A stretch of 64,000 bases of DNA from the IMG/VR virus record IMGVR_UViG_3300044700_000691, positions 124,001 through 188,000 of that record. The stretch is one strand, 5' to 3'. Below, piece by piece: positions 16,057 through 63,941 of the stretch. The translations under genes and the position numbers were made by a program. The stretch's first letter is position 1. Each line of letters begins with the position of its first letter. The notes under the pieces were generated by a model, which saw only the letters and a program-made list of their open reading frames with translations, searched no databases and was not told the DNA's origin.

Positions 16057-17436
16057 ATGATAATAAGCTCTGAATTTAAACAAGAAGATTCTAAACTAGT
16101 AGTTTCATATTATGATGAAGCTGGTAATATTGCATATGCAGTAAAGCATATCCACGATGCTGATCAATTTAATTGGAAGCTGACGGGTCGCCCTTCGGAG
16201 TATCGAAATTGGGATAATAAATTTGTTGATAAAAGTAAAAGCAAATGGCTAAGTCGCTTCCGAATCGAAGAACTTATTCAAACCAGCTTTACTAAAGAAG
16301 AGCTTGATCAAATCTATTCTGAATATACTCCAAAGAAATATTTTCTCGATATTGAGATTCAGTTAACTTCAAACGAGTTCCCCGATCCAGCCAAAGCTGC
16401 CATGCCAGTAAACTTAATTTCATTTTGTGGTCCAGATAATGTAACCTATATTTTATCCACAATGAAAAAGCTAGATAACGAAGCTATTTCTAAAATGGAA
16501 GCAGAGATTAATGAATACCTAAGTGCACAAGGCCAGGTATTTACACTTAAATATATGTTTTTTGAGAAAGAAGAAGACTTAATGTCAACCTTCTTCCATC
16601 GAATACTTCCAAAGCTTCCATTTATTACAGGTTGGAATGTAATTGAATTTGACTGGAAATATCTAATTAATCGATGCAAGCGCCTTAATATTAAACCAAT
16701 GGAATCTATGGTTTGTGATAGGCTAATCGGTAAAGGTCAAGCGCCAGTTCATTTAGGTCTACTCGATTATCTTGAAGTATTTATGAACCTTAAACCAATT
16801 AAAGTTGTTGAAAATTACAAGCTTGATTACATTTCTCAATTAGTGCTTGGAGTAAGTAAATTACATCACGAATATGGTTCAATGATGGAAGCTCAACAAG
16901 ATGTTGAAAACTTCGTAAAGTATAACGCAATTGACGTAATGCTTGTTAAATTAATTGAAGATAAGCTAAGTCTACTTGATGTAGCCTTCGCTATTTCCAA
17001 AACTGCACAAGTTGATGTATCGAAAGTCTTTAGTGCAGTGTTTATTACAGAATCCCTAATGTGTCGCCACTTTTTACGAGATGGTAAGAAAATGGCATCA
17101 GACAAAAGAGATTTAGCCGAACAGGTAACATACGAAGGTGCCTATGTAAGTAAGCCTATTCCAGGTCACCATAAATATGTTTCATGCTTTGACTTTTCGT
17201 CAATGTACCCTAACGTTCAAATCCAGTTTAATATTTCTCCTGATACATACTTAGGTAAAATGAAACCTGGTCATATTCTTAAAGAGGATGAAATTTATAC
17301 AAAAAATGGTACCCTTTTTACTAAGAAGAAAGACTCAGCTGCTCGAGTTATACTAAAATCAATGTACGATCGACGTATGGGTATTAAAGGGCATATCACT
17401 GAATTAAAACAAGCAGCGAAAAAAGCCGCACACTAA
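16057..17436 (+). CDS. gp43A: Family B DNA polymerase, N-terminal half (exonuclease + motif A), ending in the fingers
   Basis: ExoI FLDIEI, ExoII GWNVIEFDWKYL, ExoIII YNAIDV, then YEGAYV and motif A FDFSSMYP. Stops after ILKSMYDRR, lacking motifs B and C. Confidence 0.92.
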   Translation: MIISSEFKQEDSKLVVSYYDEAGNIAYAVKHIHDADQFNWKLTGRPSEYRNWDNKFVDKSKSKWLSRFRIEELIQTSFTKEELDQIYSEYTPKKYFLDIEIQLTSNEFPDPAKAAMPVNLISFCGPDNVTYILSTMKKLDNEAISKMEAEINEYLSAQGQVFTLKYMFFEKEEDLMSTFFHRILPKLPFITGWNVIEFDWKYLINRCKRLNIKPMESMVCDRLIGKGQAPVHLGLLDYLEVFMNLKPIKVVENYKLDYISQLVLGVSKLHHEYGSMMEAQQDVENFVKYNAIDVMLVKLIEDKLSLLDVAFAISKTAQVDVSKVFSAVFITESLMCRHFLRDGKKMASDKRDLAEQVTYEGAYVSKPIPGHHKYVSCFDFSSMYPNVQIQFNISPDTYLGKMKPGHILKEDEIYTKNGTLFTKKKDSAARVILKSMYDRRMGIKGHITELKQAAKKAAH

Positions 17437-18026
17437 TGATAAAATGGTTAAAAAACAAAATAAACAAATATATGTACGATATTGATGCACTCGCCCAAAC
17501 TAGAGATTTTATTATGGGCAAAGATTACCAATGGGTAAATACCCCAGATAATACCAAAATGTCAACAATTACCAAGGTAGTTGACGTATTTAGTAGAGGA
17601 GGCCTAATGGCTGTAAAATTAGCTGATGGCTCTAGTATAAGTTTAGAAGAACTTAATACTAAATTAATGGCAATTATGGATGGACAAGAAGCTTTAACTA
17701 GAGCCGAATGTATGTCTATTAGAGGGCCAGTAATTGATCCAAATATAACTAACGCAGAAGCCTTGCCTAAAGTTAGTCAACCTGTTCAAGCTGAGGTCCA
17801 AGCTACGTTAAAATCTGCAGGTATATTTGAAATGTTTGCGACTGAGGAGTCTTTACTAAACCTAAATTTAAGAGTAAACTTGCCTTCACTTAACTTATTG
17901 AAGATGATGTACAAGAACTCACAGAACAAGTCAGAATTTTTAACAGAGTTAGCAAACCATATAAATAATCAAATAACAGCAGATCATATTAAAGATGCCT
18001 TGCTGAAAAAACTTGATTCTAAATAG
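17436..18026 (+). CDS. Hypothetical protein
   Basis: 196-aa ORF whose start overlaps the polymerase N-half stop (TAATG). Confidence 0.75.
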   Translation: MIKWLKNKINKYMYDIDALAQTRDFIMGKDYQWVNTPDNTKMSTITKVVDVFSRGGLMAVKLADGSSISLEELNTKLMAIMDGQEALTRAECMSIRGPVIDPNITNAEALPKVSQPVQAEVQATLKSAGIFEMFATEESLLNLNLRVNLPSLNLLKMMYKNSQNKSEFLTELANHINNQITADHIKDALLKKLDSK

Positions 18027-18376
18027 TGGAGCTAATTATTTTACCAATTGAAGTCTCGGATTCAGAAAAAATACGAGCAATTTACTGTAAGCCAGATGGC
18101 GAACCAGTTACAATAAAAATTGATCATGCTAAAGATGCGTCGAGTTTTTCTGCAATTAAACGCATGTATCAAGAGATTGGGGTAGAAGACTTAGAACAAT
18201 CTAGAATATTTAAATTAGGAAAAATAGACAAGGACCTGTGTTTTGCTGTTAATGTTAGCGGGCTAAAAGCTGACTCAGATTTAACCAGAGTACCTTTCTA
18301 TAAAGTAATGCAAGGCGAGCATTCAAATTCAAAATTACTTGCTGCAAGCTTCCTAACTATATCATACTTTGCCTAA
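18026..18376 (+). CDS. Hypothetical protein, possibly degenerate Nudix fold
   Basis: DASSFSAIKRMYQEIGV loosely resembles a Nudix box but lacks the canonical REuxEE. Confidence 0.5.
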   Translation: MELIILPIEVSDSEKIRAIYCKPDGEPVTIKIDHAKDASSFSAIKRMYQEIGVEDLEQSRIFKLGKIDKDLCFAVNVSGLKADSDLTRVPFYKVMQGEHSNSKLLAASFLTISYFA

Positions 18377-29591: not shown

Positions 29592-30077
29592 TTATGCTTG
29601 TGGTTTTTCTCCTCTAAAGGCTTTACCTTTATTGGAATCTTTTCTTTCTGGATCAACTGTTTTATAGTTTGCCCAAATTTCATTGTATATTCGACAGCTT
29701 GCTCCCATAAAATTAATAATGCCGACAAATTTCTTACGATCATCGCCAGTCATCTTGGAAACTTTTCTTCCAATACGTCGAGCATCGTCAAGATCTAATT
29801 CTTCTTCGTCATCTTTACCAACTAATTCTTTAAGAGAATTTCTTTTCTTTTCATTTAGTTGAATAAAAGACTCAAACGTCATTGATCTTGAGTCTTCAGC
29901 ATATGCTGACTCATGGTCAGCTGCATATGATTCAAATCGATCAAGCTCGTCGCCAGTCATTAGACCAGTTGCATACATAACAAATCTTTCATAAAGATCT
30001 GCTCTTTCCTGCATAGGAATACCTGCTTCATCCATATATTGAATTATGCTAGGAGGTACGCTTAGTGTAATCCTCAT
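29592..30077 (-). CDS. Hypothetical protein with internal capsid-targeting-like motif
   Basis: SMTFESFIQLNE-KKR in mid-protein. Confidence 0.75.
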   Translation of the reverse strand: MRITLSVPPSIIQYMDEAGIPMQERADLYERFVMYATGLMTGDELDRFESYAADHESAYAEDSRSMTFESFIQLNEKKRNSLKELVGKDDEEELDLDDARRIGRKVSKMTGDDRKKFVGIINFMGASCRIYNEIWANYKTVDPERKDSNKGKAFRGEKPQA

Positions 30078-30088
30078 CGAGTTTTTAA

Positions 30089-30442
30089 TTATTTTTGTTT
30101 GCTAGCCATCTTAGGATCAACTGACTTAGTGATAGCTGTACCTTTAATAACTAATTTGCCAAATGCTGGATCAACTGACTTAGTGATAGCTTTACCTTTA
30201 GGCGCAGCTTCTGCTAAGTTTTGGTTAACAGACTTAGTGATTTTAGCACCTTTAGCGGCTTTAAGATCAGTCATTTTAGTGTCAACTGATTTTTTAATGC
30301 TAGAACCTTTAGGCATATCTAATTTAGCCATTTTAGGATCAACGCTTTTTCCTAATCTAGAACCTGCAGCAGGCATAGATGCTAAGTTTTGGTTAACTTT
30401 TTCAGTTAGGAATTCTGTGTAAGACAATACTTGGTTTGCCAT
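30089..30442 (-). CDS. Basic Lys/Ala-rich repeat protein; putative DNA-condensing internal protein
   Basis: N-terminal VLSYTEFLTE, then six 17-19-aa KSV(D/N)-type repeats. An exact 24-bp duplicate lies at 30114-30137 and 30168-30191. Confidence 0.8.
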   Translation of the reverse strand: MANQVLSYTEFLTEKVNQNLASMPAAGSRLGKSVDPKMAKLDMPKGSSIKKSVDTKMTDLKAAKGAKITKSVNQNLAEAAPKGKAITKSVDPAFGKLVIKGTAITKSVDPKMASKQK

Positions 30443-30600
30443 TTCATTGTTTCATTTTTTTAATTACTCGATCTTCTCTGATCACTCCTGGTCTCTCCAA
30501 TCCTGTAATATGAGTATTCATATTAAAAATAAGTTAAGGCCGTTAGAGGGTCTCAGATTAAATAGTTGTTATAATTACCTAATTAGACAATTATTTTAGT

Positions 30601-30608
30601 TATTTATC
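30601..30608 (-). promoter_or_regulatory. Late promoter-like GATAAATA
   Basis: Just downstream of the capsid terminator, about 160 nt ahead of the 30442 gene. Confidence 0.5.
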
Positions 30609-30625
30609 TGACCTCTTAAAATAAG

Positions 30626-30647
30626 AAAGCCCTCCGAAGAGGGCTTT
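30626..30647 (-). terminator. Intrinsic terminator with UUCG tetraloop after the major capsid gene
   Basis: On the minus strand: AAAGCCCTC-TTCG-GAGGGCTTT, then a U-rich tract. C(UUCG)G loops are typical of T4 terminators. Confidence 0.9.
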
Positions 30648-30676
30648 ACTTTATTGAGATATTAATCTATTAAAGA

Positions 30677-32266
30677 CTAAGCAACATACTCACCAGTTAA
30701 GTGTTTAACACCCGTTGCATTAGCACCGTCAACAATATTAAATTGTACGTACTGAGTTTGTGGATGCCATCCAGCTTCAACTAGAGCATATCTTGACTTC
30801 ATTCCGATTTTCGGAGAGAATGTACCCTCTGAAATAGTTTGAAGAGATTCAGCCATGATGTAAGGCATGAATTTAAGTCCTGGCTCTTCGTCAGCACCTT
30901 TACGTCCGATAAGAACAGTGTTGTTATCAAAACGTAAGTTTGGATCAACATAGATAGTTAAACCGTGAACTTTACCAGCAGGGTAAAGAGTTCCAGCAGT
31001 AGAACCTAAATCATTGTTGAATGGAGCGATTGAATAACCAGCAGCATCAGCCATAGCAGATGCAACTTTAGCAGAAACTACTGCGAAAGTACCAGCTCCG
31101 AAACGAGCTCTGTGATAAATTAAGTTAGCAGATTCAAGAATCTTAGTAACTAATTTTCTTTGAGAAGTCGTTACGTTTTCAAAAGTACCAGAACCTGGTT
31201 GAACGTTAACGTTAGCAACATAACCTTCAGTTGCGTTAGCAAGTGTAGCATTAGTTGTAGCTAAGTTTTTAACTTTAGAAACGATTTCTTTGTTGATTGT
31301 TTGAGCAAGCTCATTAACAGCAACGTTCTCCAACATAGAGATTGCATCGAAATTCCAAACTCTGTTAAGATCTTGGATTTGTTCAACAGTTGCAGAGATA
31401 GAAACTTGAGAAGTTTTAGCCTCAACGAACTTAGTAAACATTTTAAGACCCATTTGACGGAATTTAGAACCTTCACCAGCTGCTCTATCCATAGATTGAG
31501 TATACTCATTTCCAGAAAGGAAAGGACCAGAGAAATCTGTGTGAGCTTCAGTTGAAGTCGAAGTGAATCCAGAGATGTGGTTTTCTAAAGCAGATACTAA
31601 ATCAACTTTGTTAGCCGCATCTAAAGTTACACTGTTTAACACTTTACCAGCACCTAAGTAAGTAGCTAAAGTGATAGAATCATCAGAAGTAACTACTTTG
31701 AAGATCAATTGACCGTCAATACGTGAAGCACCTACGAATTGTAGTGTAAGTACTGCAGCTGTTCCAGCTCCATCACCATCAACTGTGTACTCAGTACCAG
31801 CTGTGAATGTAGCCTTTTCACCTGTAGTGAAATCAGCGATTTTGATCAAATATGGTTCGAATTCAGTACCTAAGTTACCACCTTGGTAAACATAATCTAG
31901 GTAAGGAAGGAAACCAACTGGAGAGTCCATAGGAACTACACCAACTAGGTCGAAACCAATTGTTTTTGCTGCTACTTGAATAGCAACTGGCAATAAACTT
32001 GGGAATTTATCACCTGAACCGTTTGCACCTGTTGTAGGAGCTAATGGGTTACCGATTCCACTGATAGAACCTGGTTGTTGATAGAATAAGCCTGGAGCAA
32101 CTGTAGCTTCATTGATTGAACCTGCGTTTTCGAACATTGCGTGATAGTGGCAATAATCTACTAACCAAGGACGTGAATCTGCGTTTACACCATAGCTTTC
32201 TAAAACTGGAGCCCAAGTTGACTTAATCGAAGAATCGTTTAGTCTTTTAAATACTTTTGTAGACAT
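30677..32266 (-). CDS. gp23: Major capsid protein (gp23-like)
   Basis: KSTWAPVLE, IGFDLVGVVPMDSPVG, ELAQTINKEI, GAGTFAVVSAKVASA, YMPYI-like FMPYI and KIGMKSRYAL. Confidence 0.95.
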   Translation of the reverse strand: MSTKVFKRLNDSSIKSTWAPVLESYGVNADSRPWLVDYCHYHAMFENAGSINEATVAPGLFYQQPGSISGIGNPLAPTTGANGSGDKFPSLLPVAIQVAAKTIGFDLVGVVPMDSPVGFLPYLDYVYQGGNLGTEFEPYLIKIADFTTGEKATFTAGTEYTVDGDGAGTAAVLTLQFVGASRIDGQLIFKVVTSDDSITLATYLGAGKVLNSVTLDAANKVDLVSALENHISGFTSTSTEAHTDFSGPFLSGNEYTQSMDRAAGEGSKFRQMGLKMFTKFVEAKTSQVSISATVEQIQDLNRVWNFDAISMLENVAVNELAQTINKEIVSKVKNLATTNATLANATEGYVANVNVQPGSGTFENVTTSQRKLVTKILESANLIYHRARFGAGTFAVVSAKVASAMADAAGYSIAPFNNDLGSTAGTLYPAGKVHGLTIYVDPNLRFDNNTVLIGRKGADEEPGLKFMPYIMAESLQTISEGTFSPKIGMKSRYALVEAGWHPQTQYVQFNIVDGANATGVKHLTGEYVA

Positions 32267-32283
32267 TTTGTTTTAAAAATTTT

Positions 32284-33630
32284 TTAGTTTTGTGCTCTTC
32301 TTTTTAGAGCGTCGAGGTATGTGTTACCATAGCCTCTTTGATGTTCCGCAACTTTCTCAATCGAGATAAAACCTTCTCTACCTTGGCTTTCGTTGATGTG
32401 TTGCGCATTTTTATTTTGTTTTTCGAAATAAATTCTTTCATTAATTCCTCTTAGATCTCTGCTCTCCCAGAAGTTTTTAACTTGGTAAGGAGTGTTAAGA
32501 ACAGTTAGGGAAGCTTGTGCTTCTAAGCGGCTCTTTTCTGCAGGGGTCATGCTTTCAAAAATATCTTTGAATTTAGTAGGCATGAATTTGATTAAGGTAG
32601 GAACGTTTTCTTGTTGTTTGTTAAGAACTGACTCAATAATTTGGATAACGTCTTCTTCTTTAAAATAAACTGCTCCAGAAAGAGCTTCTATAATAGCAGT
32701 TTTTTGTGTTTGATCTAAATTAAAGAATCTTGATTTATTATCTTCGTTAAGAAGTTTTAGGAATGGATATCTGCTTTCTAATACAGATTTAGCTGAGTTA
32801 TCTTTAATATGCTTAACAATTGCATTTACTGAACCAACTATATCGTTAACTTTAGAACCTTCAGCAACTTGGTAGTTTACTGATTCGTCTAATTTTTCGA
32901 TTTGGCTAAATGCAGAGGCAGATTTGGTAGAAAGACCAGATTTACCGTCATTTAGTGATTCTGCAATATACTCAGAATATTTAATTCCTTTTTCAAGGTT
33001 TTCAGCAAGATAATTAGCGTAACCAACTGAGTGCTTTAAGTTTTCAGCAACGTATTCAGTGTATCTGATACCTTGTTCTGATTTTTCAGCAACATACTCA
33101 GTGTATTGAATTCCTTTATCAAGGTTTTCTGCTAAGTATTCTGTGTACTTAATATTTTTGTTTACGTTTTCTGCGATATGCTCAGAGTAATCAATTGCAT
33201 TATTTAAGTTTTCGCCAACGTATTCAGAGTAACCGATACCTTGTTCAACTTTTTCAGCAAGATAATCCGAGTAATCGATTACCTTATTAACTTTCTCAGC
33301 AACATGCTCAGAATAGTCAATTGATTTGTTTAACATGCCAGAAAGGTAATTGTTATATTCAATTACTTTGCCAAGCTCGCTTGAAAGATAGTTAACGTAC
33401 TCAACTAATTGGTTATTAGTTGCAGGTGTGTTTTCTTCTTCAGCATTTAGATCTGTAACCAAATTCGGATCTTCATCTGTTTGGTCTTCTTCGGTAACTG
33501 CGAAGTTATCAACCATTTTATCTACACTCTCCTTAAGAGAATCAAACTTGCCTTTAACAAGTTCAGAATATTGGTTGAACGCTTCTTTCGTTACAAACTC
33601 ATTAGTCATGTGTTTGTTATTATTTTCCAT
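32284..33630 (-). CDS. Putative nested, in-frame scaffold protein (448 aa, MENNNKH...)
   Basis: In-frame ATG at 33630 lies 20 nt downstream of an internal GATAAATA (33651-33658), with an A-rich leader. Confidence 0.6.
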   Translation of the reverse strand: MENNNKHMTNEFVTKEAFNQYSELVKGKFDSLKESVDKMVDNFAVTEEDQTDEDPNLVTDLNAEEENTPATNNQLVEYVNYLSSELGKVIEYNNYLSGMLNKSIDYSEHVAEKVNKVIDYSDYLAEKVEQGIGYSEYVGENLNNAIDYSEHIAENVNKNIKYTEYLAENLDKGIQYTEYVAEKSEQGIRYTEYVAENLKHSVGYANYLAENLEKGIKYSEYIAESLNDGKSGLSTKSASAFSQIEKLDESVNYQVAEGSKVNDIVGSVNAIVKHIKDNSAKSVLESRYPFLKLLNEDNKSRFFNLDQTQKTAIIEALSGAVYFKEEDVIQIIESVLNKQQENVPTLIKFMPTKFKDIFESMTPAEKSRLEAQASLTVLNTPYQVKNFWESRDLRGINERIYFEKQNKNAQHINESQGREGFISIEKVAEHQRGYGNTYLDALKRRAQN

Positions 33631-34314
33631 AGGTTTTACTATCTCTTCATTATTTATCTTATAAACTTTGATCGATTCTGCGAGGTTTAAGCTTTCAGAA
33701 ATATCTACCAATTTGTTTATAATTGAGCTTGATTTAATATTATCCAAAGATTCGAAAAGCATAGAATAATTGCTTTGGAAACTTTCGTTAACTGATCTTC
33801 TAAGAACTGCTTCGCTAAAACCAGGCTCAGCGACTAAGTCGTATGTGAATATTCTTTGGATTTTTACTTTACCCTCATTTGCTACTTGACCAGCAGCTCT
33901 TGAAGAGGTTGAAATTGTACAGCCTGACTCAACTAGAGTTTTTGCAATCTGACCAGCCGGTGTATTTAGCAGACGTACTTTAATTTTTACGTTATTAGAA
34001 TCTTGATCGTACCATAATTTCTCAATTACGTGAGAAACATTCTTAAGTGAAACATCAAAATTTTGTGGATGATCTAACTCACCAAATAGTTGACCCTTTT
34101 CGATTTTCTCGTTTAGGTATTCTAGGTGTGGAAGATACTCAGCTTTTTCGTAGATTCGGTTGTTGTTATTCTTTGTGTCAAATACTGCACAAACCCCTTC
34201 CATAACAATGTCACCATTCTCTGACTTAACTGTGTTTAGACCTTCATTTACTCTTTCAATAATGAAGAGCATATCTGAGGTATTTGTAATTTCGTTTACG
34301 TCTGTAAGGACCAC
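32284..34314 (-). CDS. gp21: Prohead protease (gp21-like) fused to scaffold/core domain
   Basis: N-terminal ~200 aa: NNNNRIY, GELDHP, VSHVI, LNTPAG, SSRAAG, DLVAEPGF. About 450 aa of coiled-coil and repeat sequence follows. The alternative start is ATG 34272. Confidence 0.9.
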   Translation of the reverse strand: MVLTDVNEITNTSDMLFIIERVNEGLNTVKSENGDIVMEGVCAVFDTKNNNNRIYEKAEYLPHLEYLNEKIEKGQLFGELDHPQNFDVSLKNVSHVIEKLWYDQDSNNVKIKVRLLNTPAGQIAKTLVESGCTISTSSRAAGQVANEGKVKIQRIFTYDLVAEPGFSEAVLRRSVNESFQSNYSMLFESLDNIKSSSIINKLVDISESLNLAESIKVYKINNEEIVKPMENNNKHMTNEFVTKEAFNQYSELVKGKFDSLKESVDKMVDNFAVTEEDQTDEDPNLVTDLNAEEENTPATNNQLVEYVNYLSSELGKVIEYNNYLSGMLNKSIDYSEHVAEKVNKVIDYSDYLAEKVEQGIGYSEYVGENLNNAIDYSEHIAENVNKNIKYTEYLAENLDKGIQYTEYVAEKSEQGIRYTEYVAENLKHSVGYANYLAENLEKGIKYSEYIAESLNDGKSGLSTKSASAFSQIEKLDESVNYQVAEGSKVNDIVGSVNAIVKHIKDNSAKSVLESRYPFLKLLNEDNKSRFFNLDQTQKTAIIEALSGAVYFKEEDVIQIIESVLNKQQENVPTLIKFMPTKFKDIFESMTPAEKSRLEAQASLTVLNTPYQVKNFWESRDLRGINERIYFEKQNKNAQHINESQGREGFISIEKVAEHQRGYGNTYLDALKRRAQN
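32944..33405 (-). repeat. 11 tandem 14-aa (42-bp) coiled-coil repeats in the scaffold
   Basis: VEYVNYLSSELGKV / IEYNNYLSGMLNKS / IDYSEHVAEKVNKV ... IKYSEYIAESLNDG; consensus IxYSEYxAExxxxG. Confidence 0.9.
33651..33658 (-). promoter_or_regulatory. Internal late promoter-like GATAAATA
   Basis: Lies in the protease-scaffold linker at the canonical ~20-nt distance from an in-frame ATG. Confidence 0.6.
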
Positions 34315-34333
34315 GTTGCCTGATTTTTTTTAT

Positions 34334-34341
34334 TATTTATA
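34334..34341 (-). promoter_or_regulatory. T4 late promoter consensus TATAAATA
   Basis: Exact T4 late consensus 19 nt upstream of the protease GTG. Confidence 0.75.
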
Positions 34342-34384
34342 TCGTATCAGTACAAATAATTTATAACAGATGACAACTTGTCAT

Positions 34385-35239
34385 CTATATAGTTTTATTT
34401 ATTAAGCGTAGTAGGTCCTGCTTCTCGAGATCAGTTAGTTTATCAAAATTAGGTACCCTTGTATGAATTTTAAAGACATATGCACCTTTATTTTGAAACC
34501 CAGTAGCTAATCCTCGGCCTGGAATGGTTATTTGAATATCGCTAAAGGACTTAGCGCTAAGAGATTTTATCTTAAATTTTGTGCCAGACACAGATTTAAA
34601 GATTAGATTTTCAATATTAATTAACTCGGTTAAGTCTACTTCTCTGTTATCTATAATATTACCGGCTGCATCCATAACAATACCAGATGGTATTACTATT
34701 TCTAATAGGACATATAGATTACCAATAAATGTGCGATTAAACATTGCACCTCCACCAAGTTTACCAGTATTTCCCATATTTTGGAAAGTTAATCTAGAAA
34801 ATGCTCGATTACCATCAAAAATTAATTGGTGTTTGGTTTTGTCTGGGCTAAGCTCTACACTAAAACGATTTGGGGTAGACTCGCCCTTTTTATTATAGAC
34901 TACTTCAATAGTCTTACCAGTTAAAAGGTCTTTAAGATCGATTTTTTGATTAACTACTATATCAAGATCAATACCCCAATTTTGGGTAAAAATATCGGTT
35001 GAGCCAAATCCGCTAAACATGTCACGAAGGTCCTCAAAGTTAGCACCGCCTTTATCGTAACCTTTACGCTTTTCTACATCTCCTAATACACCATAAGCTT
35101 CGGCGATTTCCTTAAATTTGGAATCACCGTCAGGATTTTTATCAGGGTGATATTTAATGGCAAGTTTTCGATATGCCTTTTTAATATCTGCCTGATTGCA
35201 TCCGCGCTCAACTTCTAGTATATTATAATAGTCTTTCAC
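34385..35239 (-). CDS. dnaJ: J-domain chaperone (DnaJ/CbpA-like, no zinc finger)
   Basis: [25 protein letters not shown]-domain; C-terminal GNLYV and IPGRGL..GAYVF. Confidence 0.88.
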
Positions 35240-35258
35240 TATAATTAATATACCTAAA

Positions 35259-36062
35259 TTACTTACCCACGGTAACTGTATCTGATAAAATTAATGGTTT
35301 TGCTAAACTTACAACGCCTTTAGCTAGGCCTGGGGTCGACGGCATTTTGCCATCGATCATTGATGCAAGGGACTCAATTGTTGCCATAAGTGCATCTCCC
35401 ATAACAGCTGGCTCAGTTAAGCCGCTTGCTCCAAGTCTAGTAAAGTCTCCTCTAAGCCATACTTGCTCAGATGTTACCCTAACCTCAGAGGTTGCTGTAA
35501 TATCAACAGTTGAATTTGCAATAATTTTAATAGTAGGACCCTCTAGTTCAATAATAGACTCAGTGTCTTTATGCTCAATTGTAATAGTTGAATCCTGAGC
35601 AATATTAATTCGGGATTTTTTATTTTCGAATGTTAAGCCTTTGCCTACAGTAAACCACAATTTAAGCTGTTCATCGCCATCCCATAGGATAAAATGCGAA
35701 CCTAAATATTCACCATCCTTTTTTAATTCTTCCTGTAAGTCTGCCGCAAGTTCCTGTAACTGAGAATACTCAGGCGAATAAATGTCGCCTTGATCAAATG
35801 TTACAACTACAAGGGCTCCGTTTTTTGGAATAGAAATACTGGCAGCACCCTCTTTACCAAAAAATGTAGGTTTTGCCATTGGATTTGCCCAAGGAAGATC
35901 CTCAGTTTTTAGTGTATCAAATACTCCATGCACTAAAATTTTACATCGACCCTGTTTAAGAGGATCGTTTGCATCAACAACTGTACCCATATACTTTTTT
36001 AAAATATAGTCAATCGTTGTGTCTGACGAGCGTTTAATATCTAGGTCTCTGTTTACAATCAT
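35259..36062 (-). CDS. gp5: Baseplate central spike (gp5/gpV-like OB-fold, no lysozyme domain)
   Basis: [39 protein letters not shown]-fold, then a short beta-strand-rich region. Confidence 0.82.
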
Positions 36063-43232: not shown

Positions 43233-43520
43233 TTATGACTTTTTATTTAGTTGGCGCTTTACCTCGGCTCTAACCTTTTCCATCTTTTTAGCATAGGCTG
43301 GATTATCATTACGATTAAATACAATTTGCTGGTTAAGGCTACCTGTAATTTTTCTCATATCGCCGCCTCTAGTTTTAATTAACCATGAAGCTAAGGCTTT
43401 GATTCCAAGGCTTTTAAATCTACCATTTGCATCAGGGGCATTTGAATCGTGCCAATCTGGTGAGTTTTTGGTTTTTCTTGCCTCTGTAATAAATTCTGTG
43501 TATGTAAGTATATTATTCAT
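43233..43520 (-). CDS. Basic hypothetical protein with N-terminal targeting-like motif (start probably ATG 43520)
   Basis: MNNILTYTEFITE-ARK. Confidence 0.75.
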   Translation of the reverse strand: MNNILTYTEFITEARKTKNSPDWHDSNAPDANGRFKSLGIKALASWLIKTRGGDMRKITGSLNQQIVFNRNDNPAYAKKMEKVRAEVKRQLNKKS

Positions 43521-43524
43521 ATAA

Positions 43525-44052
43525 TTACCAGTACCCCGGATAAGTTTTACCGCCCCAAAGATGAGCATATCGATTTATTCGGCAAGCCCAATATCCAGCT
43601 TTGGTTTTGTCTTTCTTTAGGTGACATTGATGTCTAGCTGCAAATGATGCTCTAGCCTTTGGATTGCTTACCTTTGCGGTAAGGCCTCCATGGATATCGC
43701 CGAATGCAATTTTAATGATTTTGCCAGTTTTTGGATTTTTAACGTAGACATGATACTTTTTAGCACCACCTCGTTTTGGATAGTTTAGGTCAACTTCTCG
43801 ACCTTTATATTCAGCCTCATTAAGTTCTTCAATTGGAAAATCTAGTGGCACTGGCTCCCCTAAATATTCTCCAATAAAACCTAAATCAGTTTTTATGAAT
43901 AATTCCTCTGTAATAGAATCAAATGTAACCCCATTTTCAAAATAAAACCTAGCCTCAGTTAATAACGAAATATGTGCATCACTGCCCGGCCTAAAGGCGG
44001 ATTCGGCAATACATATATTTTCATTTAAATGATACTGTAGATTAGGCGACAT
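43525..44052 (-). CDS. Conserved phage hypothetical protein, basic C-domain with His/Cys cluster
   Basis: LNE-AEYKGREVDL..KKYHVYVKN..FGD..SFAARHQC..GYWAC. Confidence 0.75.
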   Translation of the reverse strand: MSPNLQYHLNENICIAESAFRPGSDAHISLLTEARFYFENGVTFDSITEELFIKTDLGFIGEYLGEPVPLDFPIEELNEAEYKGREVDLNYPKRGGAKKYHVYVKNPKTGKIIKIAFGDIHGGLTAKVSNPKARASFAARHQCHLKKDKTKAGYWACRINRYAHLWGGKTYPGYW

Positions 44053-49573: not shown

Positions 49574-50074
49574 TTAGTCCAAAGATCCGTATTTTCCTGC
49601 TCCCATATCCTTTGCAAAATCTTTGCCAGCCTTTGAAGAAACGCTAAGGCTAATGCCTTTTAGTAAACCAGCATCCTCTGGGTTCTCTTCAAAATAGGTA
49701 ATTAAGCTAGCTAGGTTAACATTTTGATATGGTTGAATTGTTCCTTCTGGTAGTTTTTTTTCTAATTCTCTACCAGATGAATAGTCTTTCCAGTTAAGAT
49801 TCCAACAATAAAATCTAACTTCTTCTTTCATTTTTGTTGTATAGTAACGGTCAACATCTGCAAGTCTGGCTTGAACTTCAGAAAGATCAGTTTTATATGA
49901 AGTCGAGTGGCCATAGATATCAGCTGGTGTTCCAATGCTTAAACTATCTGATGTAATATCAGTCAATTTAACTAGTTGGTCCATAAGTTCCTGAAATGGT
50001 AATCCTTTAAGTGCCTCAGATTCTTCTGCTTCGTTTAGGAACTGCTTAAAGTTTCCAATAGTGCGTTTTGTCAT
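49574..50074 (-). CDS. Hypothetical protein with N-terminal targeting-like motif
   Basis: MTKRTIGNFKQFLNE-AEE, after a late promoter. Confidence 0.75.
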   Translation of the reverse strand: MTKRTIGNFKQFLNEAEESEALKGLPFQELMDQLVKLTDITSDSLSIGTPADIYGHSTSYKTDLSEVQARLADVDRYYTTKMKEEVRFYCWNLNWKDYSSGRELEKKLPEGTIQPYQNVNLASLITYFEENPEDAGLLKGISLSVSSKAGKDFAKDMGAGKYGSLD

Positions 50075-50095: not shown

Positions 50096-50695
50096 TTATT
50101 TATCCCGAACTAATCTTTGGATTAACTCGCAAAACTCATCAACTGAGTCTTGACTAAAATTATTTGTAAAATGGTCAAAGGAATTACCTTCACGAGCATC
50201 TTTAAATCTAAATGGCGCATCTTCAATCAATTTTAGCATAAGTCGCTTTTCTTCTTTTGCTGAAACTAATCCATCCCATAGGTCTTTTTTGCGAGCCTGA
50301 TCCTGTTTAAATTCATCTGGTGCATCAATCATAATAGTTTTGCAGTTTTGGTAGCCCGGTCTTTTAATTAAGCCATATAGCTCAGATTGAGCTTGACTAA
50401 ATTCCAAGCGATTCCAAATGGTTGCCCAAGTAGCTGCGGTAATATGAGCTCTATCAAATACAAAAATCTTATCGGGAAAATGCTCATGTAGATCAAGTAT
50501 TGTCATAATATTACCCATACTAAAATAGTGAATACCAGAATCAGATTTATCCCATTCTTTAACTATTGCTGAATATTCATCAGCTAGGTAAAATTTATAA
50601 TAAAATAGATTTAATTCATCACCGTGTAGCTTAACCAGTTGATTAAGTAAATGGGTTTTGCCTGAGTGACGGGTACCTTCAATAAAAATTATCAT
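50096..50695 (-). CDS. P-loop nucleoside monophosphate kinase (thymidylate-kinase-like)
   Basis: IIFIEGTRHSGKT Walker A and VFDRAH (the TMPK DR motif). Confidence 0.75.
   Translation of the reverse strand: MIIFIEGTRHSGKTHLLNQLVKLHGDELNLFYYKFYLADEYSAIVKEWDKSDSGIHYFSMGNIMTILDLHEHFPDKIFVFDRAHITAATWATIWNRLEFSQAQSELYGLIKRPGYQNCKTIMIDAPDEFKQDQARKKDLWDGLVSAKEEKRLMLKLIEDAPFRFKDAREGNSFDHFTNNFSQDSVDEFCELIQRLVRDK
50097..50104 (-). promoter_or_regulatory. Late promoter-like GATAAATA
   Basis: 22 nt upstream of ATG 50074. Confidence 0.6.
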
Positions 50696-57139: not shown

Positions 57140-58246
57140 ATGGAGATAACTGAAGTTTCAAAGTTTGTAAAAAGTGTCATGAGCGCCAGATTTCCTGGCA
57201 TTCACGATAAACAGACTATTGATGAGAGCGATGGCAAATTAAATTTTGCATGTCCATTTTGCGGAGACTCTAAGGTTAAAGCTTCCAAAAAAAGAGGACA
57301 CCTCTATATGGAAACTAAAACCTATAAGTGTTTTAACGATGGTTGCATGGCATGGATGAGTCTTGCTGAATTTGTTGCAAGCCTAAGCAATCAATATGGA
57401 ATTATATCGTCTCTGTTCTTAGACGAAGCTGATCTTGATATTAATTACAAAAAAACTACTGAAAATCACCTTGTTAGATTCTTAACATCTAACAGAAAAG
57501 GTATGATTTCAATTAGTGATGTAATTAACCGTTTTTCGCTAAAGAGATTAGACCAAATTTCAGAAAATTCTGCTGCATATAGCTTTGCTCAATCTAGAGG
57601 CTTAACTAAAGTTAAAAACTTTGGCGATATTATGTATGCTGATGCAATGGATAATAAAGTTTATATTTTTAACTTTGATCACCGTTCTGGTAAAATTCTA
57701 GGCCTTGCAACTAGAAGTTTAGACCCATTTACCGATAGAAAATACCTGATTAAATCCTATAATGAGGTTTCTAAAATCTTTACAAATGGAGATACTCCAG
57801 AAATTATTGATGATGCCAATTATCTTAATAACTATTTTAATATCCTAAATGTTGATTTTACGCAGCCGCTAATGGTTGCAGAAGGTCAAATTGACTCAAT
57901 GTTTTTAAAGAACGGTTTAGCAACATCTGGTGTTTCCAAAGCTAAATCTATCTTAAAAGCAATGGGTGCAGTCGATATTAAAATTATATTTGACCGAGAC
58001 AAAGCCGGTAAAGATTCAATGCTAGCTTTTATTAAAGATGGATATTCTGTATTTTTATGGAATAGTTTAATGGATGAATTAAAGAAAAAGTTTCCAACTC
58101 AAATTATTAAGCTTTCAAAAATTAAAGATATTAATGACCTATTTCTTTTCCTAAATAAACAGGATCCATCATTTACAATTTCTCAATTTCAAGACTTAAT
58201 AGGTAAGCACTTTAGTAATTCAGTATATGATATAGTCTACCTATAA
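57140..58246 (+). CDS. gp61: DNA primase (gp61-like)
   Basis: Zinc finger FACPFCGDS..RGH..YKCFNDGC; TOPRIM VAEGQIDSMF, IIFDRDKAG and KDINDL. Confidence 0.92.
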   Translation: MEITEVSKFVKSVMSARFPGIHDKQTIDESDGKLNFACPFCGDSKVKASKKRGHLYMETKTYKCFNDGCMAWMSLAEFVASLSNQYGIISSLFLDEADLDINYKKTTENHLVRFLTSNRKGMISISDVINRFSLKRLDQISENSAAYSFAQSRGLTKVKNFGDIMYADAMDNKVYIFNFDHRSGKILGLATRSLDPFTDRKYLIKSYNEVSKIFTNGDTPEIIDDANYLNNYFNILNVDFTQPLMVAEGQIDSMFLKNGLATSGVSKAKSILKAMGAVDIKIIFDRDKAGKDSMLAFIKDGYSVFLWNSLMDELKKKFPTQIIKLSKIKDINDLFLFLNKQDPSFTISQFQDLIGKHFSNSVYDIVYL

Positions 58247-58249
58247 ATA
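58242..58249 (+). promoter_or_regulatory. T4 late promoter consensus TATAAATA
   Basis: Exact consensus 5 nt before the gp4 ATG. Confidence 0.6.
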
Positions 58250-62597: not shown

Positions 62598-63941
62598 TTA
62601 TTTATCGGAAATATAGTCCGAAAAAGTTTTTATACGGGTTGTGCCAGAACCAGGATTTGCTCCAAGTTCTTGACGACTTGCTTTATATGAACCCCATTGA
62701 GATGGTACGCGAATAGTTCCGGAAACTCGTTGTGGATTTCTTTCCGGTTGCAGGTCATCCATATCTGGATTGCTTTTCGTGCGGTCTCTGAATAACTCTG
62801 GTGTTAGCAGGTCCTCTTCAATCTTTCCACCTAATATCATCCATACCTTTTTAGGGTCCTTTCCTTCAGGGATCCCCTGTGAAAAGCTATCAAAGTCTTG
62901 TGCTAACCAAAACTCTCTCATTAGAGTGCCAGATACGCCATCTTCATCTCCGTCTGCACCAGAGTTTCCTCCAAATTCAGGGCGTTCAGTTTCTATTCTA
63001 TTAATTTTAGAAATTGAGCCTTGCCATTTTTCCATAGCAGCCCATCTGGGCATATCCTCATCTGTAGCATAAAGATTAACTACCGTATTTGGTGCATATT
63101 GTGTTTGGCCAAGAGCTTCAACAAATTCATATCCACTTCTGACTGGAGTAACGTTTGATAGGTGCAATTCAACATTATCAAAGTCTTCTAAATAGTAATC
63201 TAATACATCCATTGCAGATTTGCCGCTAATTCCAGCCATTTCTGTCTTGGAAATAAACACATGTACCTCGTCGTTTTCTTCTGCAATTTTTGCAATTGCA
63301 TCATAGTGACCGGCATGTGGTGGTTTAAATTTACCACTAAATATTCCGACGGTTTTAATATTTAATTTTGGAACTTGAGTACGACCAATTTTTCTGGTCT
63401 TCATTGTAATTTCTGCAAACTCAGTCTCTAGACTCTTTGCAAGTGCTAGGTTTTTGCGATCATCATCATAAAAAGTAAAATGAGTAAAGCCTTTTGCCAT
63501 TAGTTTACGAAAGGCTTCTTTTTTCTTTTCTGCAATAGTGCCGTCGAATCCAAATTCTGGATCACTTACTGCATAAATTAGGTTGGGGTGAATATCTATA
63601 CCGTGGGATAATAGAAATTCTCTGACTAGTTTCTTATTATCTCTAGCTGTAATAATCCCGACAGCAGTCCCGGATTCGTATGCAGAACGTAATATGTTAA
63701 GTACCCATTCAACTAATCTTCCAGCCTTTAAAATATTAGCATCATTGAATTGGGTATAGTTAACCTCATGATGAGGTTCCTTTTCATAATCGTTAAACTC
63801 CTGTGGAGTAAGATCAAATTTCTCGCCAGTCAAGGCATCCTTAACAAGGATCTTTGCATTGGTAACAACTAGCGTGTCATCCAAATCAAATACGATAATT
63901 GAATTGTCTCTAGAAAATGCCATTTCGTTTACTGTTTGCAC
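62598..63941 (-). CDS. HAD phosphatase fused to HxGH nucleotidyltransferase (cytidylyltransferase/NMNAT-like fold)
   Basis: IVFDLDDTL..IITAR..KK..FYDDD, then IFSGKFKPPHAGH..SGTLMR; C-terminal RIKTFSDYISDK. Confidence 0.8.
   Translation of the reverse strand: MQTVNEMAFSRDNSIIVFDLDDTLVVTNAKILVKDALTGEKFDLTPQEFNDYEKEPHHEVNYTQFNDANILKAGRLVEWVLNILRSAYESGTAVGIITARDNKKLVREFLLSHGIDIHPNLIYAVSDPEFGFDGTIAEKKKEAFRKLMAKGFTHFTFYDDDRKNLALAKSLETEFAEITMKTRKIGRTQVPKLNIKTVGIFSGKFKPPHAGHYDAIAKIAEENDEVHVFISKTEMAGISGKSAMDVLDYYLEDFDNVELHLSNVTPVRSGYEFVEALGQTQYAPNTVVNLYATDEDMPRWAAMEKWQGSISKINRIETERPEFGGNSGADGDEDGVSGTLMREFWLAQDFDSFSQGIPEGKDPKKVWMILGGKIEEDLLTPELFRDRTKSNPDMDDLQPERNPQRVSGTIRVPSQWGSYKASRQELGANPGSGTTRIKTFSDYISDK
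62599..62606 (-). promoter_or_regulatory. Late promoter-like GATAAATA
   Basis: 20 nt upstream of ATG 62578. Confidence 0.6.

What the first reader, a model, noticed from the sequence alone, without database searches (positions are those of the whole stretch)
32284..34341. Protease-scaffold fusion with a nested gene driven by its own internal late promoter
Seen: a gp21-type protease is continuous with about 450 aa of scaffold-like sequence containing 11 tandem 14-aa repeats. An exact TATAAATA lies 19 nt before the full gene. A second GATAAATA (33651-33658) lies 20 nt before an in-frame ATG (33630), right at the domain boundary. Established: T4 encodes gp21 and gp22 separately, while nested protease/scaffold genes are known from lambda (C/Nu3) and herpesviruses. 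Inference: this T4-like phage makes a minor protease-scaffold and an abundant stand-alone scaffold from one locus by transcriptional nesting. The repeat (YSEYxAE) also resembles the cargo tag and supplies many x-x-E cleavage sites.
Basis: partly seen in the sequence, partly recalled or inferred. Interest (0 to 1): 0.75.

Follow-up and report, generated by a model that had tools for sequence, protein, structure and literature searches.

The report
Nested scaffold gene inside phage protease gene
A freshwater T4-like phage fuses its head-maturation protease to its scaffolding protein, and a strictly conserved internal late-promoter motif and start codon probably let it also make the scaffold alone, as herpesviruses do.

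Summary
ORF 32284-34314 (-), 676 aa, is a gp21-type (Pfam S77) prohead protease fused in frame to about 440 aa of helical, repeat-rich scaffold. The major capsid gene follows directly. TATAAATA lies 19 nt before its GTG start. GATAAATA (33651-33658) lies 20 nt before in-frame ATG 33630 and 41 nt before ATG 33609.

The 8-mers are not enriched as plain words. The core ATAAATA is this genome's gene-upstream signal: 40 of 82 copies lie 4-28 nt before an ORF start, mostly at structural genes. The genome encodes a gp55-type late sigma factor.

The key evidence is comparative. In 39 distinct relatives (54-100% aa identity) the internal ATAAATA is invariant at DNA level. Ile220 is the rare codon ATA in 39/39, against 0-2/39 at other invariant Ile columns. 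Synonymous diversity reaches its gene-wide minimum there. Met236 is conserved in nearly all relatives down to 34% identity. All full-length genes start with GTG or TTG, never ATG.

Metatranscriptome contigs support the upstream transcript start but cannot resolve an internal one. The most likely reading (about 0.65) is transcriptional and translational nesting, like herpesvirus UL26/UL26.5. It is a new variant of a known kind.

The parts
32284..34314 (-). Full-length protease-scaffold ORF, 676 aa, GTG start
   Evidence: More than 5000 relatives, many of 640-680 aa. The start codon is GTG or TTG in all 39 distinct relatives.
34334..34341 (-). P1: the upstream late-promoter motif TATAAATA, followed by AT and an A-run, 19 nt before the GTG
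   Evidence: Invariant in the 54-100% clade. PWM score 15.6 bits. RNA contig depth drops sharply upstream of it in 4 of 4 metatranscriptomes.
33868..34212 (-). Protease core (Pfam S77, aa 35-149). Catalytic His82 is at 34071-34069 and Ser137 at 33906-33904.
   Evidence: The alignment to T4 gp21 structure 5JBL places His82 and Ser137 at its two Ala-substituted positions. Both are invariant in 33 relatives.
33694..33702 (-). Ile205-Ser206-Glu207, a candidate I-x-E self-release site between protease and scaffold
   Evidence: I205 and E207 are invariant and S206 nearly so. The T4 gp21 cleavage consensus comes from established knowledge. Cleavage here is inferred, not tested.
33637..33663 (-). P2: the internal late-promoter block. 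The core GATAAATA is at 33658-33651 and is encoded by Lys219-Ile220-Asn221-Asn222.
   Evidence: ATAAATA is invariant in 39/39 ORFs, with R at position -1. ATA is used 39/39 and AAT 39/39. Synonymous diversity is at its minimum here. PWM score 12.5 bits, rank 49 in the genome.
33628..33630 (-). ATG of Met229 (MENNN...), 20 nt after P2. It would give a nested 448-aa product.
   Evidence: Present only in the clade of 77% identity or more. The spacing equals the genome's typical motif-to-start distance.
33607..33609 (-). ATG of Met236 (MTNEF...), 41 nt after P2. It would give a nested 441-aa product and is the family-wide conserved start candidate.
   Evidence: Met is at this column in 62 of the 65 relatives, down to 34% identity; L083-L085 have it two residues downstream. 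It is invariant in alignment A1. It has the best start-context score among the gene's internal Mets.
32284..33609 (-). Scaffold part shared by both products. It is almost entirely helical and has a conserved C-terminal domain.
   Evidence: Secondary structure from the AF2 model, which has low confidence. No detectable homology to T4 gp22.
32947..33408 (-). Eleven tandem 14-aa repeats (x-I-x-Y-S/T-E-Y-L/V-A-E-x-x-x-x), aa 303-456
   Evidence: [LIV]-x-E sites in the whole protein number 36 against 17 +/- 3.4 in shuffles.
32359..32454 (-). Second zone of synonymous constraint (codons 621-652), 90-190 nt before the capsid gene ATG. Most relatives carry a third embedded TATAAATAAT here ('P3'). In the window it is degenerate (AAAATAAAAAT).
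30677..32266 (-). gp23-type major capsid protein gene, 17 nt after the scaffold stop, with no promoter motif of its own in the gap
30626..30647 (-). Intrinsic-terminator-like hairpin (9 pairs plus a T-run) that closes the two-gene unit
34368..34386 (.). Palindromic hairpin straddling the end of the DnaJ gene (stop codon 34385-34387), upstream of P1. It may end the upstream unit.
   Evidence: RNA depth is low upstream of P1.

Best explanation
The locus is a two-gene late head-assembly unit: protease-scaffold, then major capsid protein, closed by a terminator.

The first gene encodes a T4 gp21-type serine protease fused in frame, through a disordered linker, to a long helical scaffold.

- A late promoter P1 (TATAAATAAT) drives the whole unit. 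The full-length protein starts at a weak GTG codon, so little protease-scaffold is made.
- A second late promoter P2 (GATAAATAAT) is written into codons 219-222 at the domain boundary.
- I infer that P2 starts a shorter mRNA near 33644. Its first in-frame ATGs are Met229, 20 nt after the motif, and the family-wide Met236, 41 nt after it. Either gives a stand-alone scaffold of 448 or 441 aa with the same C-terminus.
- The P2 transcript also runs into the capsid gene. Transcription would then rise from 5' to 3': protease, then scaffold, then capsid protein.
- The fused copy would bring the protease into the prohead through the shared scaffold domain. The protease would then free itself, with I-S-E207 as the candidate site, and cut the scaffold at its many [LIV]-x-E sites.

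Shown here: the architecture, the genome-wide motif, the DNA-level conservation, the conserved Met, the non-ATG full-length start, and the transcript boundary at P1. Inferred: the P2 start site, the nested product, the stoichiometry and the cleavage.
For: 1. Motif identity. The core ATAAATA lies 4-28 nt before ORF starts in 40 of 82 copies. The consensus is R-ATAAATA-A-Y-W-AAAAA. About 36 of the 49 best PWM sites precede a start codon.
2. The motif marks structural genes such as the tail sheath. The 24-gene replication block has only one copy.
3. The genome encodes a gp55-type late sigma factor (phrog_234, E 3e-15). NATAAATA is the reported late promoter of T4-like cyanophages (PMC2984593).
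4. Comparative DNA evidence came from loci fetched with protease-domain patterns only, so there is no selection bias at the site. ATAAATA is invariant in 39/39 ORFs of 54-100% identity, while the flanking codons vary.
5. Of 189 invariant degenerate amino-acid columns, only 9 use a single codon. These include I220 = ATA, N221 = AAT and N231 = AAT. ATA is used 0-2/39 at the 8 other invariant Ile columns.
6. Synonymous diversity is 0.12 at codons 220-241 against a gene mean of 0.43, the minimum of the whole gene. In the close clade, 18-19 of 20 third positions are invariant there, against a mean of 36%.
7. Sense-strand ATAAATA occurs nowhere else in the 39 ORFs except at P1 and at the P3 site.
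8. Met236 lies in a variable linker and is conserved in 62 of the 65 relatives, down to 34% identity.
9. The full-length start codon is GTG or TTG in 39/39.
10. No separate gp22-family scaffold gene is found in the genome.
11. RNA contig depth falls upstream of P1 in 4 of 4 runs: 89 to 10, 38 to 0, 108 to 0 and 15.6 to 7. Contigs just downstream of P2 are 1.3 to 1.7 times deeper than those just upstream in two runs.
12. Precedent: the T4 record itself annotates internal transcription plus in-frame translation within gene 17.
Against: - No internal transcript start is shown. Logan contig depths are contig means. Their steps fall at different places in different runs (about 33150, 32500, 31920 and 33540), which fits mixed strains better than promoters.
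- The one contig end near P2 (33664) is explained by a nearby strain variant at 33633-33636.
- P2 scores lower than most gene-upstream sites (12.5 bits), because its downstream part is only partly A-rich.
- In relatives without Met229 the motif-to-ATG distance is 38-41 nt, longer than the usual 16-26 nt.
- The start-context scores of Met229 and Met236 are only moderate, at the 9th and 19th percentile of real starts.
- The 34-38% clade keeps the Met but shows no clear copy of its own promoter motif there. The promoter may therefore be younger than the nested start.
- Tenacibaculum phage PTm1 has the fusion but no boundary Met.
- No gp45 homologue was found with the T4 protein; the search is insensitive and the genome is about 84% complete.
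Confidence: 0.65

Rival explanations
1. Translational nesting only, as in lambda C/Nu3. The stand-alone scaffold is made by internal initiation at Met236 or Met229 on the full-length P1 mRNA. The ATAAATA word is not a promoter.
For: The Met is conserved even in the 34-38% clade, which lacks a recognisable promoter there. An A-rich AAAATAA block 10-20 nt before the ATG is conserved family-wide, as expected for a start site without a Shine-Dalgarno sequence. RNA data show no clear step at P2.
Against: It does not explain why the exact genome-wide promoter word, including R at position -1, is frozen at DNA level 38-41 nt upstream of the ATG with a rare Ile codon in 39/39 sequences. It also does not explain why that word is avoided everywhere else in the gene.
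Confidence: 0.12
2. P2 is a real internal promoter, but its job is only to raise transcription of the downstream capsid gene. No separate scaffold protein is made, and the conserved Met is a protein-level feature.
For: The capsid gene has no motif in its 17-nt gap. The window's clade lacks the P3 site that 23 of 39 relatives carry before the capsid gene. Capsid-gene contigs are 3-5 times deeper than protease contigs.
Against: A transcript from P2 would begin 14-35 nt before two in-frame ATGs in an A-rich context, so translation is hard to avoid. Met is conserved across 34-100% identity in an otherwise variable linker, and synonymous constraint extends about 40 nt past the ATG. A 1:1 protease-to-scaffold ratio would be unusual (established knowledge of T4, lambda and herpesviruses).
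Confidence: 0.13
3. There is no nucleic-acid function. The word is kept by amino-acid constraint, codon bias or a rare-codon pause at a domain boundary, and the in-frame ATG is chance.
For: In-frame ATGs within 8-45 nt of internal ATAAATA sites are not rare. I estimate about 25% expected, and several are seen. GATAAATA as a word is at chance level in the window.
Against: Other invariant Ile and Asn columns mix codons freely at this divergence. The constraint covers about 25 codons, not one. Position -1 varies only between G and A although the amino acid there varies among K, R and Q.
Confidence: 0.05

Closest known systems
Herpesvirus UL26 / UL26.5 (assemblin-scaffold gene with a nested, separately transcribed scaffold gene)
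   Same: An N-terminal serine protease of the same structural clan is fused to a C-terminal scaffold. A shorter in-frame product shares the C-terminus and is proposed to come from a promoter inside the long ORF. The long form is expected to be the minor one. This architecture is reported as conserved across Herpesvirales, with about 10-fold more scaffold transcript (PMC11565193).
   Different: Here the promoter is a bacterial-phage gp55-type -10 word, and the transcript probably also carries the capsid gene. The internal transcript and product are not yet shown. Whether the likeness is inherited or convergent is open.
Phage lambda C / Nu3, and similar nested or fused protease-scaffold genes (Mu I/Z, P2 gpO); from my own knowledge
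   Same: The protease and scaffold share one reading frame and C-terminus. A shorter scaffold arises from an internal in-frame start (lambda, Mu).
   Different: Those proteases belong to other families. Nesting there is translational on one mRNA, and no internal promoter is involved. P2 gpO has no nested product.
T4 genes 21 (protease) and 22 (scaffold), and T4 internal late promoters (gene 17)
   Same: The protease family is the same (phrog_207 and Pfam S77). The position next to gene 23 is the same. The late-promoter core and the gp55-type factor are the same. T4 gene 17 is annotated with internal transcription and in-frame translation.
   Different: T4 has separate genes 21 and 22. The scaffold here has no detectable similarity to gp22. 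The preferred first base of the motif is A or G rather than T.
Tenacibaculum phage PTm1 ORF-300 and Sphingomonas phage PAU gp151/gp152
   Same: The PTm1 gene is a 564-aa protease-scaffold fusion directly before the capsid gene. The PAU protease is the closest relative among cultured phages.
   Different: PTm1 has no Met at the domain boundary and uses another upstream word. PAU keeps the protease and scaffold as two adjacent genes.

Membership tests
T4 gp21-type prohead protease (Pfam PF03420 Peptidase_S77 / phrog_207) | Profile match above the curated threshold | tested here: met
   PF03420 scores 47.5 bits against a cut-off of 27. phrog_207 matches at E 3.5e-35, and T4 gp21 falls in the same PHROG.
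T4 gp21-type prohead protease (Pfam PF03420 Peptidase_S77 / phrog_207) | Catalytic His and Ser present | tested here: met
   The alignment to 5JBL places His82 and Ser137 opposite its two Ala positions in the LN-A-PP and GV-A-SR motifs. I take these to be the inactivating substitutions. Both residues are invariant in 33 relatives. The third triad residue was not assigned.
T4 gp21-type prohead protease (Pfam PF03420 Peptidase_S77 / phrog_207) | Proteolytic activity with L/I-x-E specificity | not testable with these tools
   Only indirect evidence: [LIV]-x-E sites are enriched at 36 against 17 +/- 3.4.
gp55-dependent T4-type late promoter | TATAAATA-like -10 word at a fixed short distance before late genes | tested here: met
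   The core ATAAATA lies 4-28 nt before 40 ORF starts. It is found at structural genes and is rare in the replication block.
gp55-dependent T4-type late promoter | Phage encodes a gp55-type sigma factor | tested here: met
   A 139-aa ORF at about 119.6-120.1 kb of the genome matches phrog_234 'late sigma transcription factor' at E 3.2e-15.
gp55-dependent T4-type late promoter | gp45 clamp and gp33 co-activator present | tested here: inconclusive
   T4 gp45 found no match. The single-sequence search is insensitive and the genome is about 84% complete. gp33 was not searched.
gp55-dependent T4-type late promoter | Transcript 5' end a few nt downstream of the word | tested here: inconclusive
   At P1, RNA contigs end at 34315-34333 and depth drops upstream in 4 of 4 runs. 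At P2 there is no resolvable start.
Nested protease/scaffold gene pair (UL26/UL26.5 type) | Long ORF with protease plus scaffold, and a shorter in-frame ORF sharing the C-terminus | tested here: met
   The boundary Met is conserved in 62 of the 65 relatives.
Nested protease/scaffold gene pair (UL26/UL26.5 type) | Separate transcript from a promoter inside the long ORF | tested here: inconclusive
   Comparative evidence for the promoter word is strong. There is no direct mapping of a start site.
Nested protease/scaffold gene pair (UL26/UL26.5 type) | Two protein products, with the short one in excess | not testable with these tools
   The phage is uncultured and no proteome was available.
T4 gp22 scaffold family (phrog_237) | Sequence homology to gp22 | tested here: not met
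   BLASTP gives E 0.14. phrog_237 and T4 gp22 find nothing in the genome. The C-terminal part is called a scaffold from its position, helical repeats and cleavage sites only.

The most novel reading that the evidence does not exclude
One coding sequence carries a staircase of embedded gp55-type late promoters: P1 before the gene, P2 at the protease/scaffold boundary and, in most relatives, P3 near the 3' end before the capsid gene. Combined with a weak non-ATG first start codon, this hard-wires the order protease, then scaffold, then capsid protein in a large clade of uncultured freshwater T4-like phages. It would be the bacterial-virus counterpart of the UL26/UL26.5 expression architecture found across Herpesvirales. 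It would also raise the possibility that transcriptional nesting of the assemblin-scaffold module is older than the split between tailed phages and herpesviruses.
Probability: 0.35. Interest if true: 0.75.

Novelty: new variant of a known kind. Interest (0 to 1): 0.62.

Why it matters
Head assembly needs few protease molecules and many scaffold and capsid molecules. T4 solves this with separate genes, lambda with an internal translation start, and herpesviruses with an internal promoter.

This locus suggests that a widespread group of environmental T4-like phages uses the herpesvirus solution, with a protease of the same structural clan. More than 5000 relatives were found in metagenomes.

- It bears on the shared history of tailed phages and herpesviruses.
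- It gives a clean case of promoter signals conserved inside coding sequence. Such signals constrain codon choice and are missed by gene callers, which annotate one product where there may be two.
- It gives a testable promoter consensus (R-ATAAATA-A plus an A-run) for an uncultured phage group.

Tried and rejected
1. Bare word statistics. TATAAATA and GATAAATA are not enriched in the window, so I did not use them as evidence. Positional and comparative tests replaced them.
2. RNA evidence. Depth steps lie at different places in each run and probably reflect k-mers shared by co-occurring strains. I use only the consistent drop upstream of P1. The contig end at 33664 is explained by the variant at 33633-33636.
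3. The first set of relatives was fetched with patterns that included KVYKINNE and MENNNKHM, so it is biased at the site. I repeated the search with protease-domain patterns.
4. The AlphaFold2 model of the full protein has mean pLDDT 45. I used it only for secondary structure and made no fold search.
5. Homology of the C-terminal part to T4 gp22 was not found.
6. A T4 gp45 homologue was not found, which is uninformative.
7. The start-context PWM gives only moderate scores for Met229 and Met236.
8. I looked for the distant clade's own upstream word (GATATATAA) before its conserved Met and found no convincing copy.
9. PTm1 was checked as a cultured example. It is a fusion without a boundary Met.
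10. Literature searches found no description of a transcriptionally nested protease-scaffold gene in a T4-like phage. The library is incomplete, so this is not proof of absence.
Full report
**What is there**

The window is part of a 216,815-bp viral contig of 36% G+C (window = 124001-188000 of it). The contig is found in many freshwater metagenomes and metatranscriptomes.

On the minus strand lies an ORF at 32284..34314 (676 aa, GTG start). A gp23-type major capsid gene (30677..32266) follows it after 17 nt. A complete DnaJ gene (34385..35239) precedes it.

- Residues 35-149 match Pfam Peptidase_S77 (47.5 bits against a cut-off of 27). Residues 20-390 match phrog_207, the PHROG that also holds T4 gp21.
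- The alignment to the solved T4 gp21 structure 5JBL places His82 and Ser137 at the two catalytic positions. Both are invariant in relatives.
- After a linker predicted as coil (aa 207-242), the rest is almost all helix. The AlphaFold2 model has low confidence (pLDDT 45), so I use it for secondary structure only.
- The helical part holds eleven 14-aa tandem repeats at aa 303-456.
- [LIV]-x-E triplets fit the T4 gp21 cleavage consensus, which I take from established knowledge. They number 36 against 17 +/- 3.4 in shuffles.
- The C-terminal part has no detectable similarity to T4 gp22. No gp22-family gene is found elsewhere in the genome. It is therefore a scaffold by position and character, not by homology.

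**The two motifs**

TATAAATA (34341-34334) lies 19 nt before the GTG. GATAAATA (33658-33651) lies 20 nt before in-frame ATG 33630 (Met229) and 41 nt before in-frame ATG 33609 (Met236).

As words they are not above chance. TATAAATA occurs 3 times against 9.5 expected, and GATAAATA 7 times against 6.2. The core ATAAATA, however, is the genome's gene-upstream signal.

- 40 of its 82 copies lie 4-28 nt before an ORF start, 30 of them at 16-28 nt. I estimate about one by chance.
- A matrix built from 32 such sites, excluding the two under test, gives R-ATAAATA-A-Y-W-AAAAA. Position -1 is A in 51%, G in 43% and T in 4%.
- Scanning the genome ranks the upstream site 34th (15.6 bits) and the internal site 49th (12.5 bits). 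About 36 of the 49 sites at or above that score precede a start codon.
- The motif stands before structural genes such as the tail sheath.
- The 24-gene plus-strand block has one copy only. That block encodes ribonucleotide reductase, gp32, DNA polymerase B, a RecA-like protein, a helicase, Mre11/Rad50-like proteins and thymidylate synthase.
- The genome encodes a gp55-type late sigma factor (phrog_234, E 3e-15).
- NATAAATA is the late promoter reported for T4-like cyanophages (PMC2984593).

I conclude that this is a gp55-type late promoter whose preferred first base is a purine.

**Comparative test**

A protein search found more than 5000 relatives. Many are of 640-680 aa, so the fusion is common in uncultured phages.

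I fetched DNA of relatives with patterns taken only from the protease domain, which avoids selection at the site under test. This gave 39 distinct ORFs of 54-100% amino-acid identity and a second clade of 34-38%.

In the 39 ORFs:

- The internal ATAAATA is invariant. The preceding codon varies (AAG, AGG, AGA, AAA, CAA, CGA) but always ends in a purine.
- Of 189 invariant amino-acid columns with degenerate codons, only 9 use one codon throughout. Among them are the adjacent Ile220 (ATA, 39/39) and Asn221 (AAT, 39/39), and also Asn231.
- The eight other invariant Ile columns use ATA in 0-2 of 39 sequences. Other invariant Asn columns mix AAT and AAC freely.
- Synonymous diversity averages 0.43. 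It falls to 0.12 at codons 220-241, the lowest value in the gene.
- Within the close clade, 18-19 of 20 third positions are invariant at 33667-33595, against a mean of 36%.
- Sense-strand ATAAATA occurs nowhere else in these 39 ORFs, apart from the upstream promoter and one further site described below.
- The upstream promoter, gTATAAATAAT plus an A-run, is also invariant. It is followed about 20 nt later by GTG (16 sequences) or TTG (23 sequences), never ATG.

**Which Met**

Met229 exists only in the clade of 77% identity or more. Met236 is invariant in alignment A1 and sits at the same column in 62 of the 65 relatives, down to 34% identity, within an otherwise variable linker. The other three (L083-L085) carry a Met two residues downstream.

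It is preceded family-wide by an A-rich block containing AAAATAA. Its start-context score is the best among the gene's internal Mets, but only moderate: the 96.7th percentile of internal ATGs and the 19th percentile of real starts.

In the 34-38% clade the gene-upstream word is GATATATAA. No clear copy precedes the conserved Met there. The nested start thus looks older than the internal promoter.

**RNA**

One call laid Logan contigs of four lake metatranscriptomes on 30000-35900.

- Depth falls sharply upstream of 34334 in all four runs: 89 to 10, 38 to 0, 108 to 0 and 15.6 to 7. One contig ends at 34315. This fits a transcript start at P1.
- Across P2, contigs just downstream are 1.3 and 1.7 times deeper than those just upstream in two runs.
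- Larger steps lie at about 33150, 32500, 31920 and 33540 in the four runs. Contig depths are means, and related strains share k-mers unevenly, so I treat this as uninformative for P2.
- A terminator-like hairpin follows the capsid gene at 30626-30647. The unit is therefore P1, the protease-scaffold gene with P2 inside it, the capsid gene, then the terminator.

**Most likely mechanism (confidence about 0.65)**

- P1 plus a weak GTG start gives a little full-length protease-scaffold.
- P2 gives a shorter mRNA. Its first ATGs yield a stand-alone scaffold of 448 or 441 aa, and the same mRNA continues into the capsid gene.
- The fusion carries the protease into the prohead through the shared scaffold domain.
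- The protease frees itself, with the invariant Ile205-Ser206-Glu207 as candidate site. It then degrades the repeats.

The rival readings are translational nesting only (0.12), a P2 that serves only the capsid gene (0.13), and no nucleic-acid function (0.05).

**Comparison with known systems**

- It works like herpesvirus UL26/UL26.5, whose transcriptional nesting is reported as conserved across Herpesvirales (PMC11565193).
- It resembles lambda C/Nu3 in the shared frame, but adds a promoter (my own knowledge of lambda).
- T4 keeps genes 21 and 22 apart. T4 does have internal late transcription with in-frame translation in gene 17.
- Among cultured phages, PAU has separate protease and scaffold genes. 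Tenacibaculum phage PTm1 has a 564-aa fusion without a boundary Met.
- I found no paper describing this arrangement in a T4-like phage, in an incomplete library.

I rate it a new variant of a known kind.

**A second embedded element**

Codons 621-652 (32454-32359) form the second synonymous-constraint minimum, at 0.15. In 23 of the 39 relatives this zone starts with an exact ATAAATA about 150 nt before the capsid ATG: TATAAATAAT in 21 and GATAAATAAC in 2.

In the window's clade the word is degenerate (AAAATAAAAAT), while the block downstream of it stays conserved. This suggests a third embedded promoter or leader for the capsid gene in most of the family. It also makes P2 more important for capsid expression in the window's own clade.

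Noticed in passing
window 32359-32454 (-): Second zone of strong synonymous constraint, inside the 3' end of the scaffold gene. 23 of 39 relatives carry an exact ATAAATA here, about 150 nt before the capsid ATG (TATAAATAAT in 21, GATAAATAAC in 2). The window's clade has a degenerate AAAATAAAAAT, but the block downstream of it is conserved (AACGAAAGCCAAGGTAGAGAAGG in the window). It may be the capsid gene's promoter or leader.
   Followed up: partly
window 50097-50104 and 62599-62606 (-); also genome 14318, 25548, 32561, 87920: At several gene junctions the promoter word [AG]ATAAATAA overlaps the stop codon (TAA) of the preceding gene. One 9-mer thus both ends a gene and starts the next transcript.
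   Followed up: partly
window 30089-30442, 43233-43568, 49574-50074 (-); six more outside the window: Nine proteins carry, within their first 30 residues, a tag of the form [YF]-x-[EQD]-[FY]-[LI]-[NTA]-E, for example MKNQVKQFSEFINE. It resembles the T4 capsid-targeting sequence and the scaffold repeat Y-S/T-E-Y-L/V-A-E. They are probably protease-processed internal head proteins.
   Followed up: partly
genome 18367, 33122, 205281 (outside the window); window 58242-58249 (+): In one class of genes, several of them with the N-terminal tag, ATAAATA lies only 4-6 nt before the ATG. If transcription starts 6-8 nt after the word, these mRNAs would be leaderless or nearly so.
   Followed up: no
genome 80272-80279 (-), inside the 2240-aa ORF 75287-82009 (outside the window): Another deep-internal sense-strand TATAAATAA, with an in-frame ATG 26 nt downstream. 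It is a possible second nested gene. Its conservation was not examined.
   Followed up: no
window 34385-35239 (-): The phage encodes a DnaJ with a full J domain (E 1e-24) and a weak match to the DnaJ C-terminal domain (below Pfam's cut-off). It sits directly upstream of the head-assembly unit. RNA depth over it is 10 to 50 times lower than over the head genes in the metatranscriptomes.
   Followed up: no
window 30601-30608 (-): A high-scoring promoter site (21.9 bits) right after the capsid-gene terminator lies 158 nt before the next called ORF (30442). This implies a long leader or an uncalled small gene.
   Followed up: no
window 16057-18376 (+): The family-B DNA polymerase match stops at profile position 147 of 453 at the end of a 459-aa ORF, and short ORFs follow. 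The polymerase gene may be split, as in some T4-like phages. Not checked.
   Followed up: no
genome 381, 1723, 9439 (-), outside the window: A repeated stretch of about 40 nt (AAAATAAGTAACAAAAAGTTTTTTACTGTCAA...) near the left end of the contig. It may be an early-promoter or regulatory repeat.
   Followed up: no
whole window and genome: ATAAATA is depleted outside gene-upstream positions. About 42 non-promoter copies are seen, against roughly 150 expected from base composition alone (my estimate). This fits selection against stray late promoters.
   Followed up: partly
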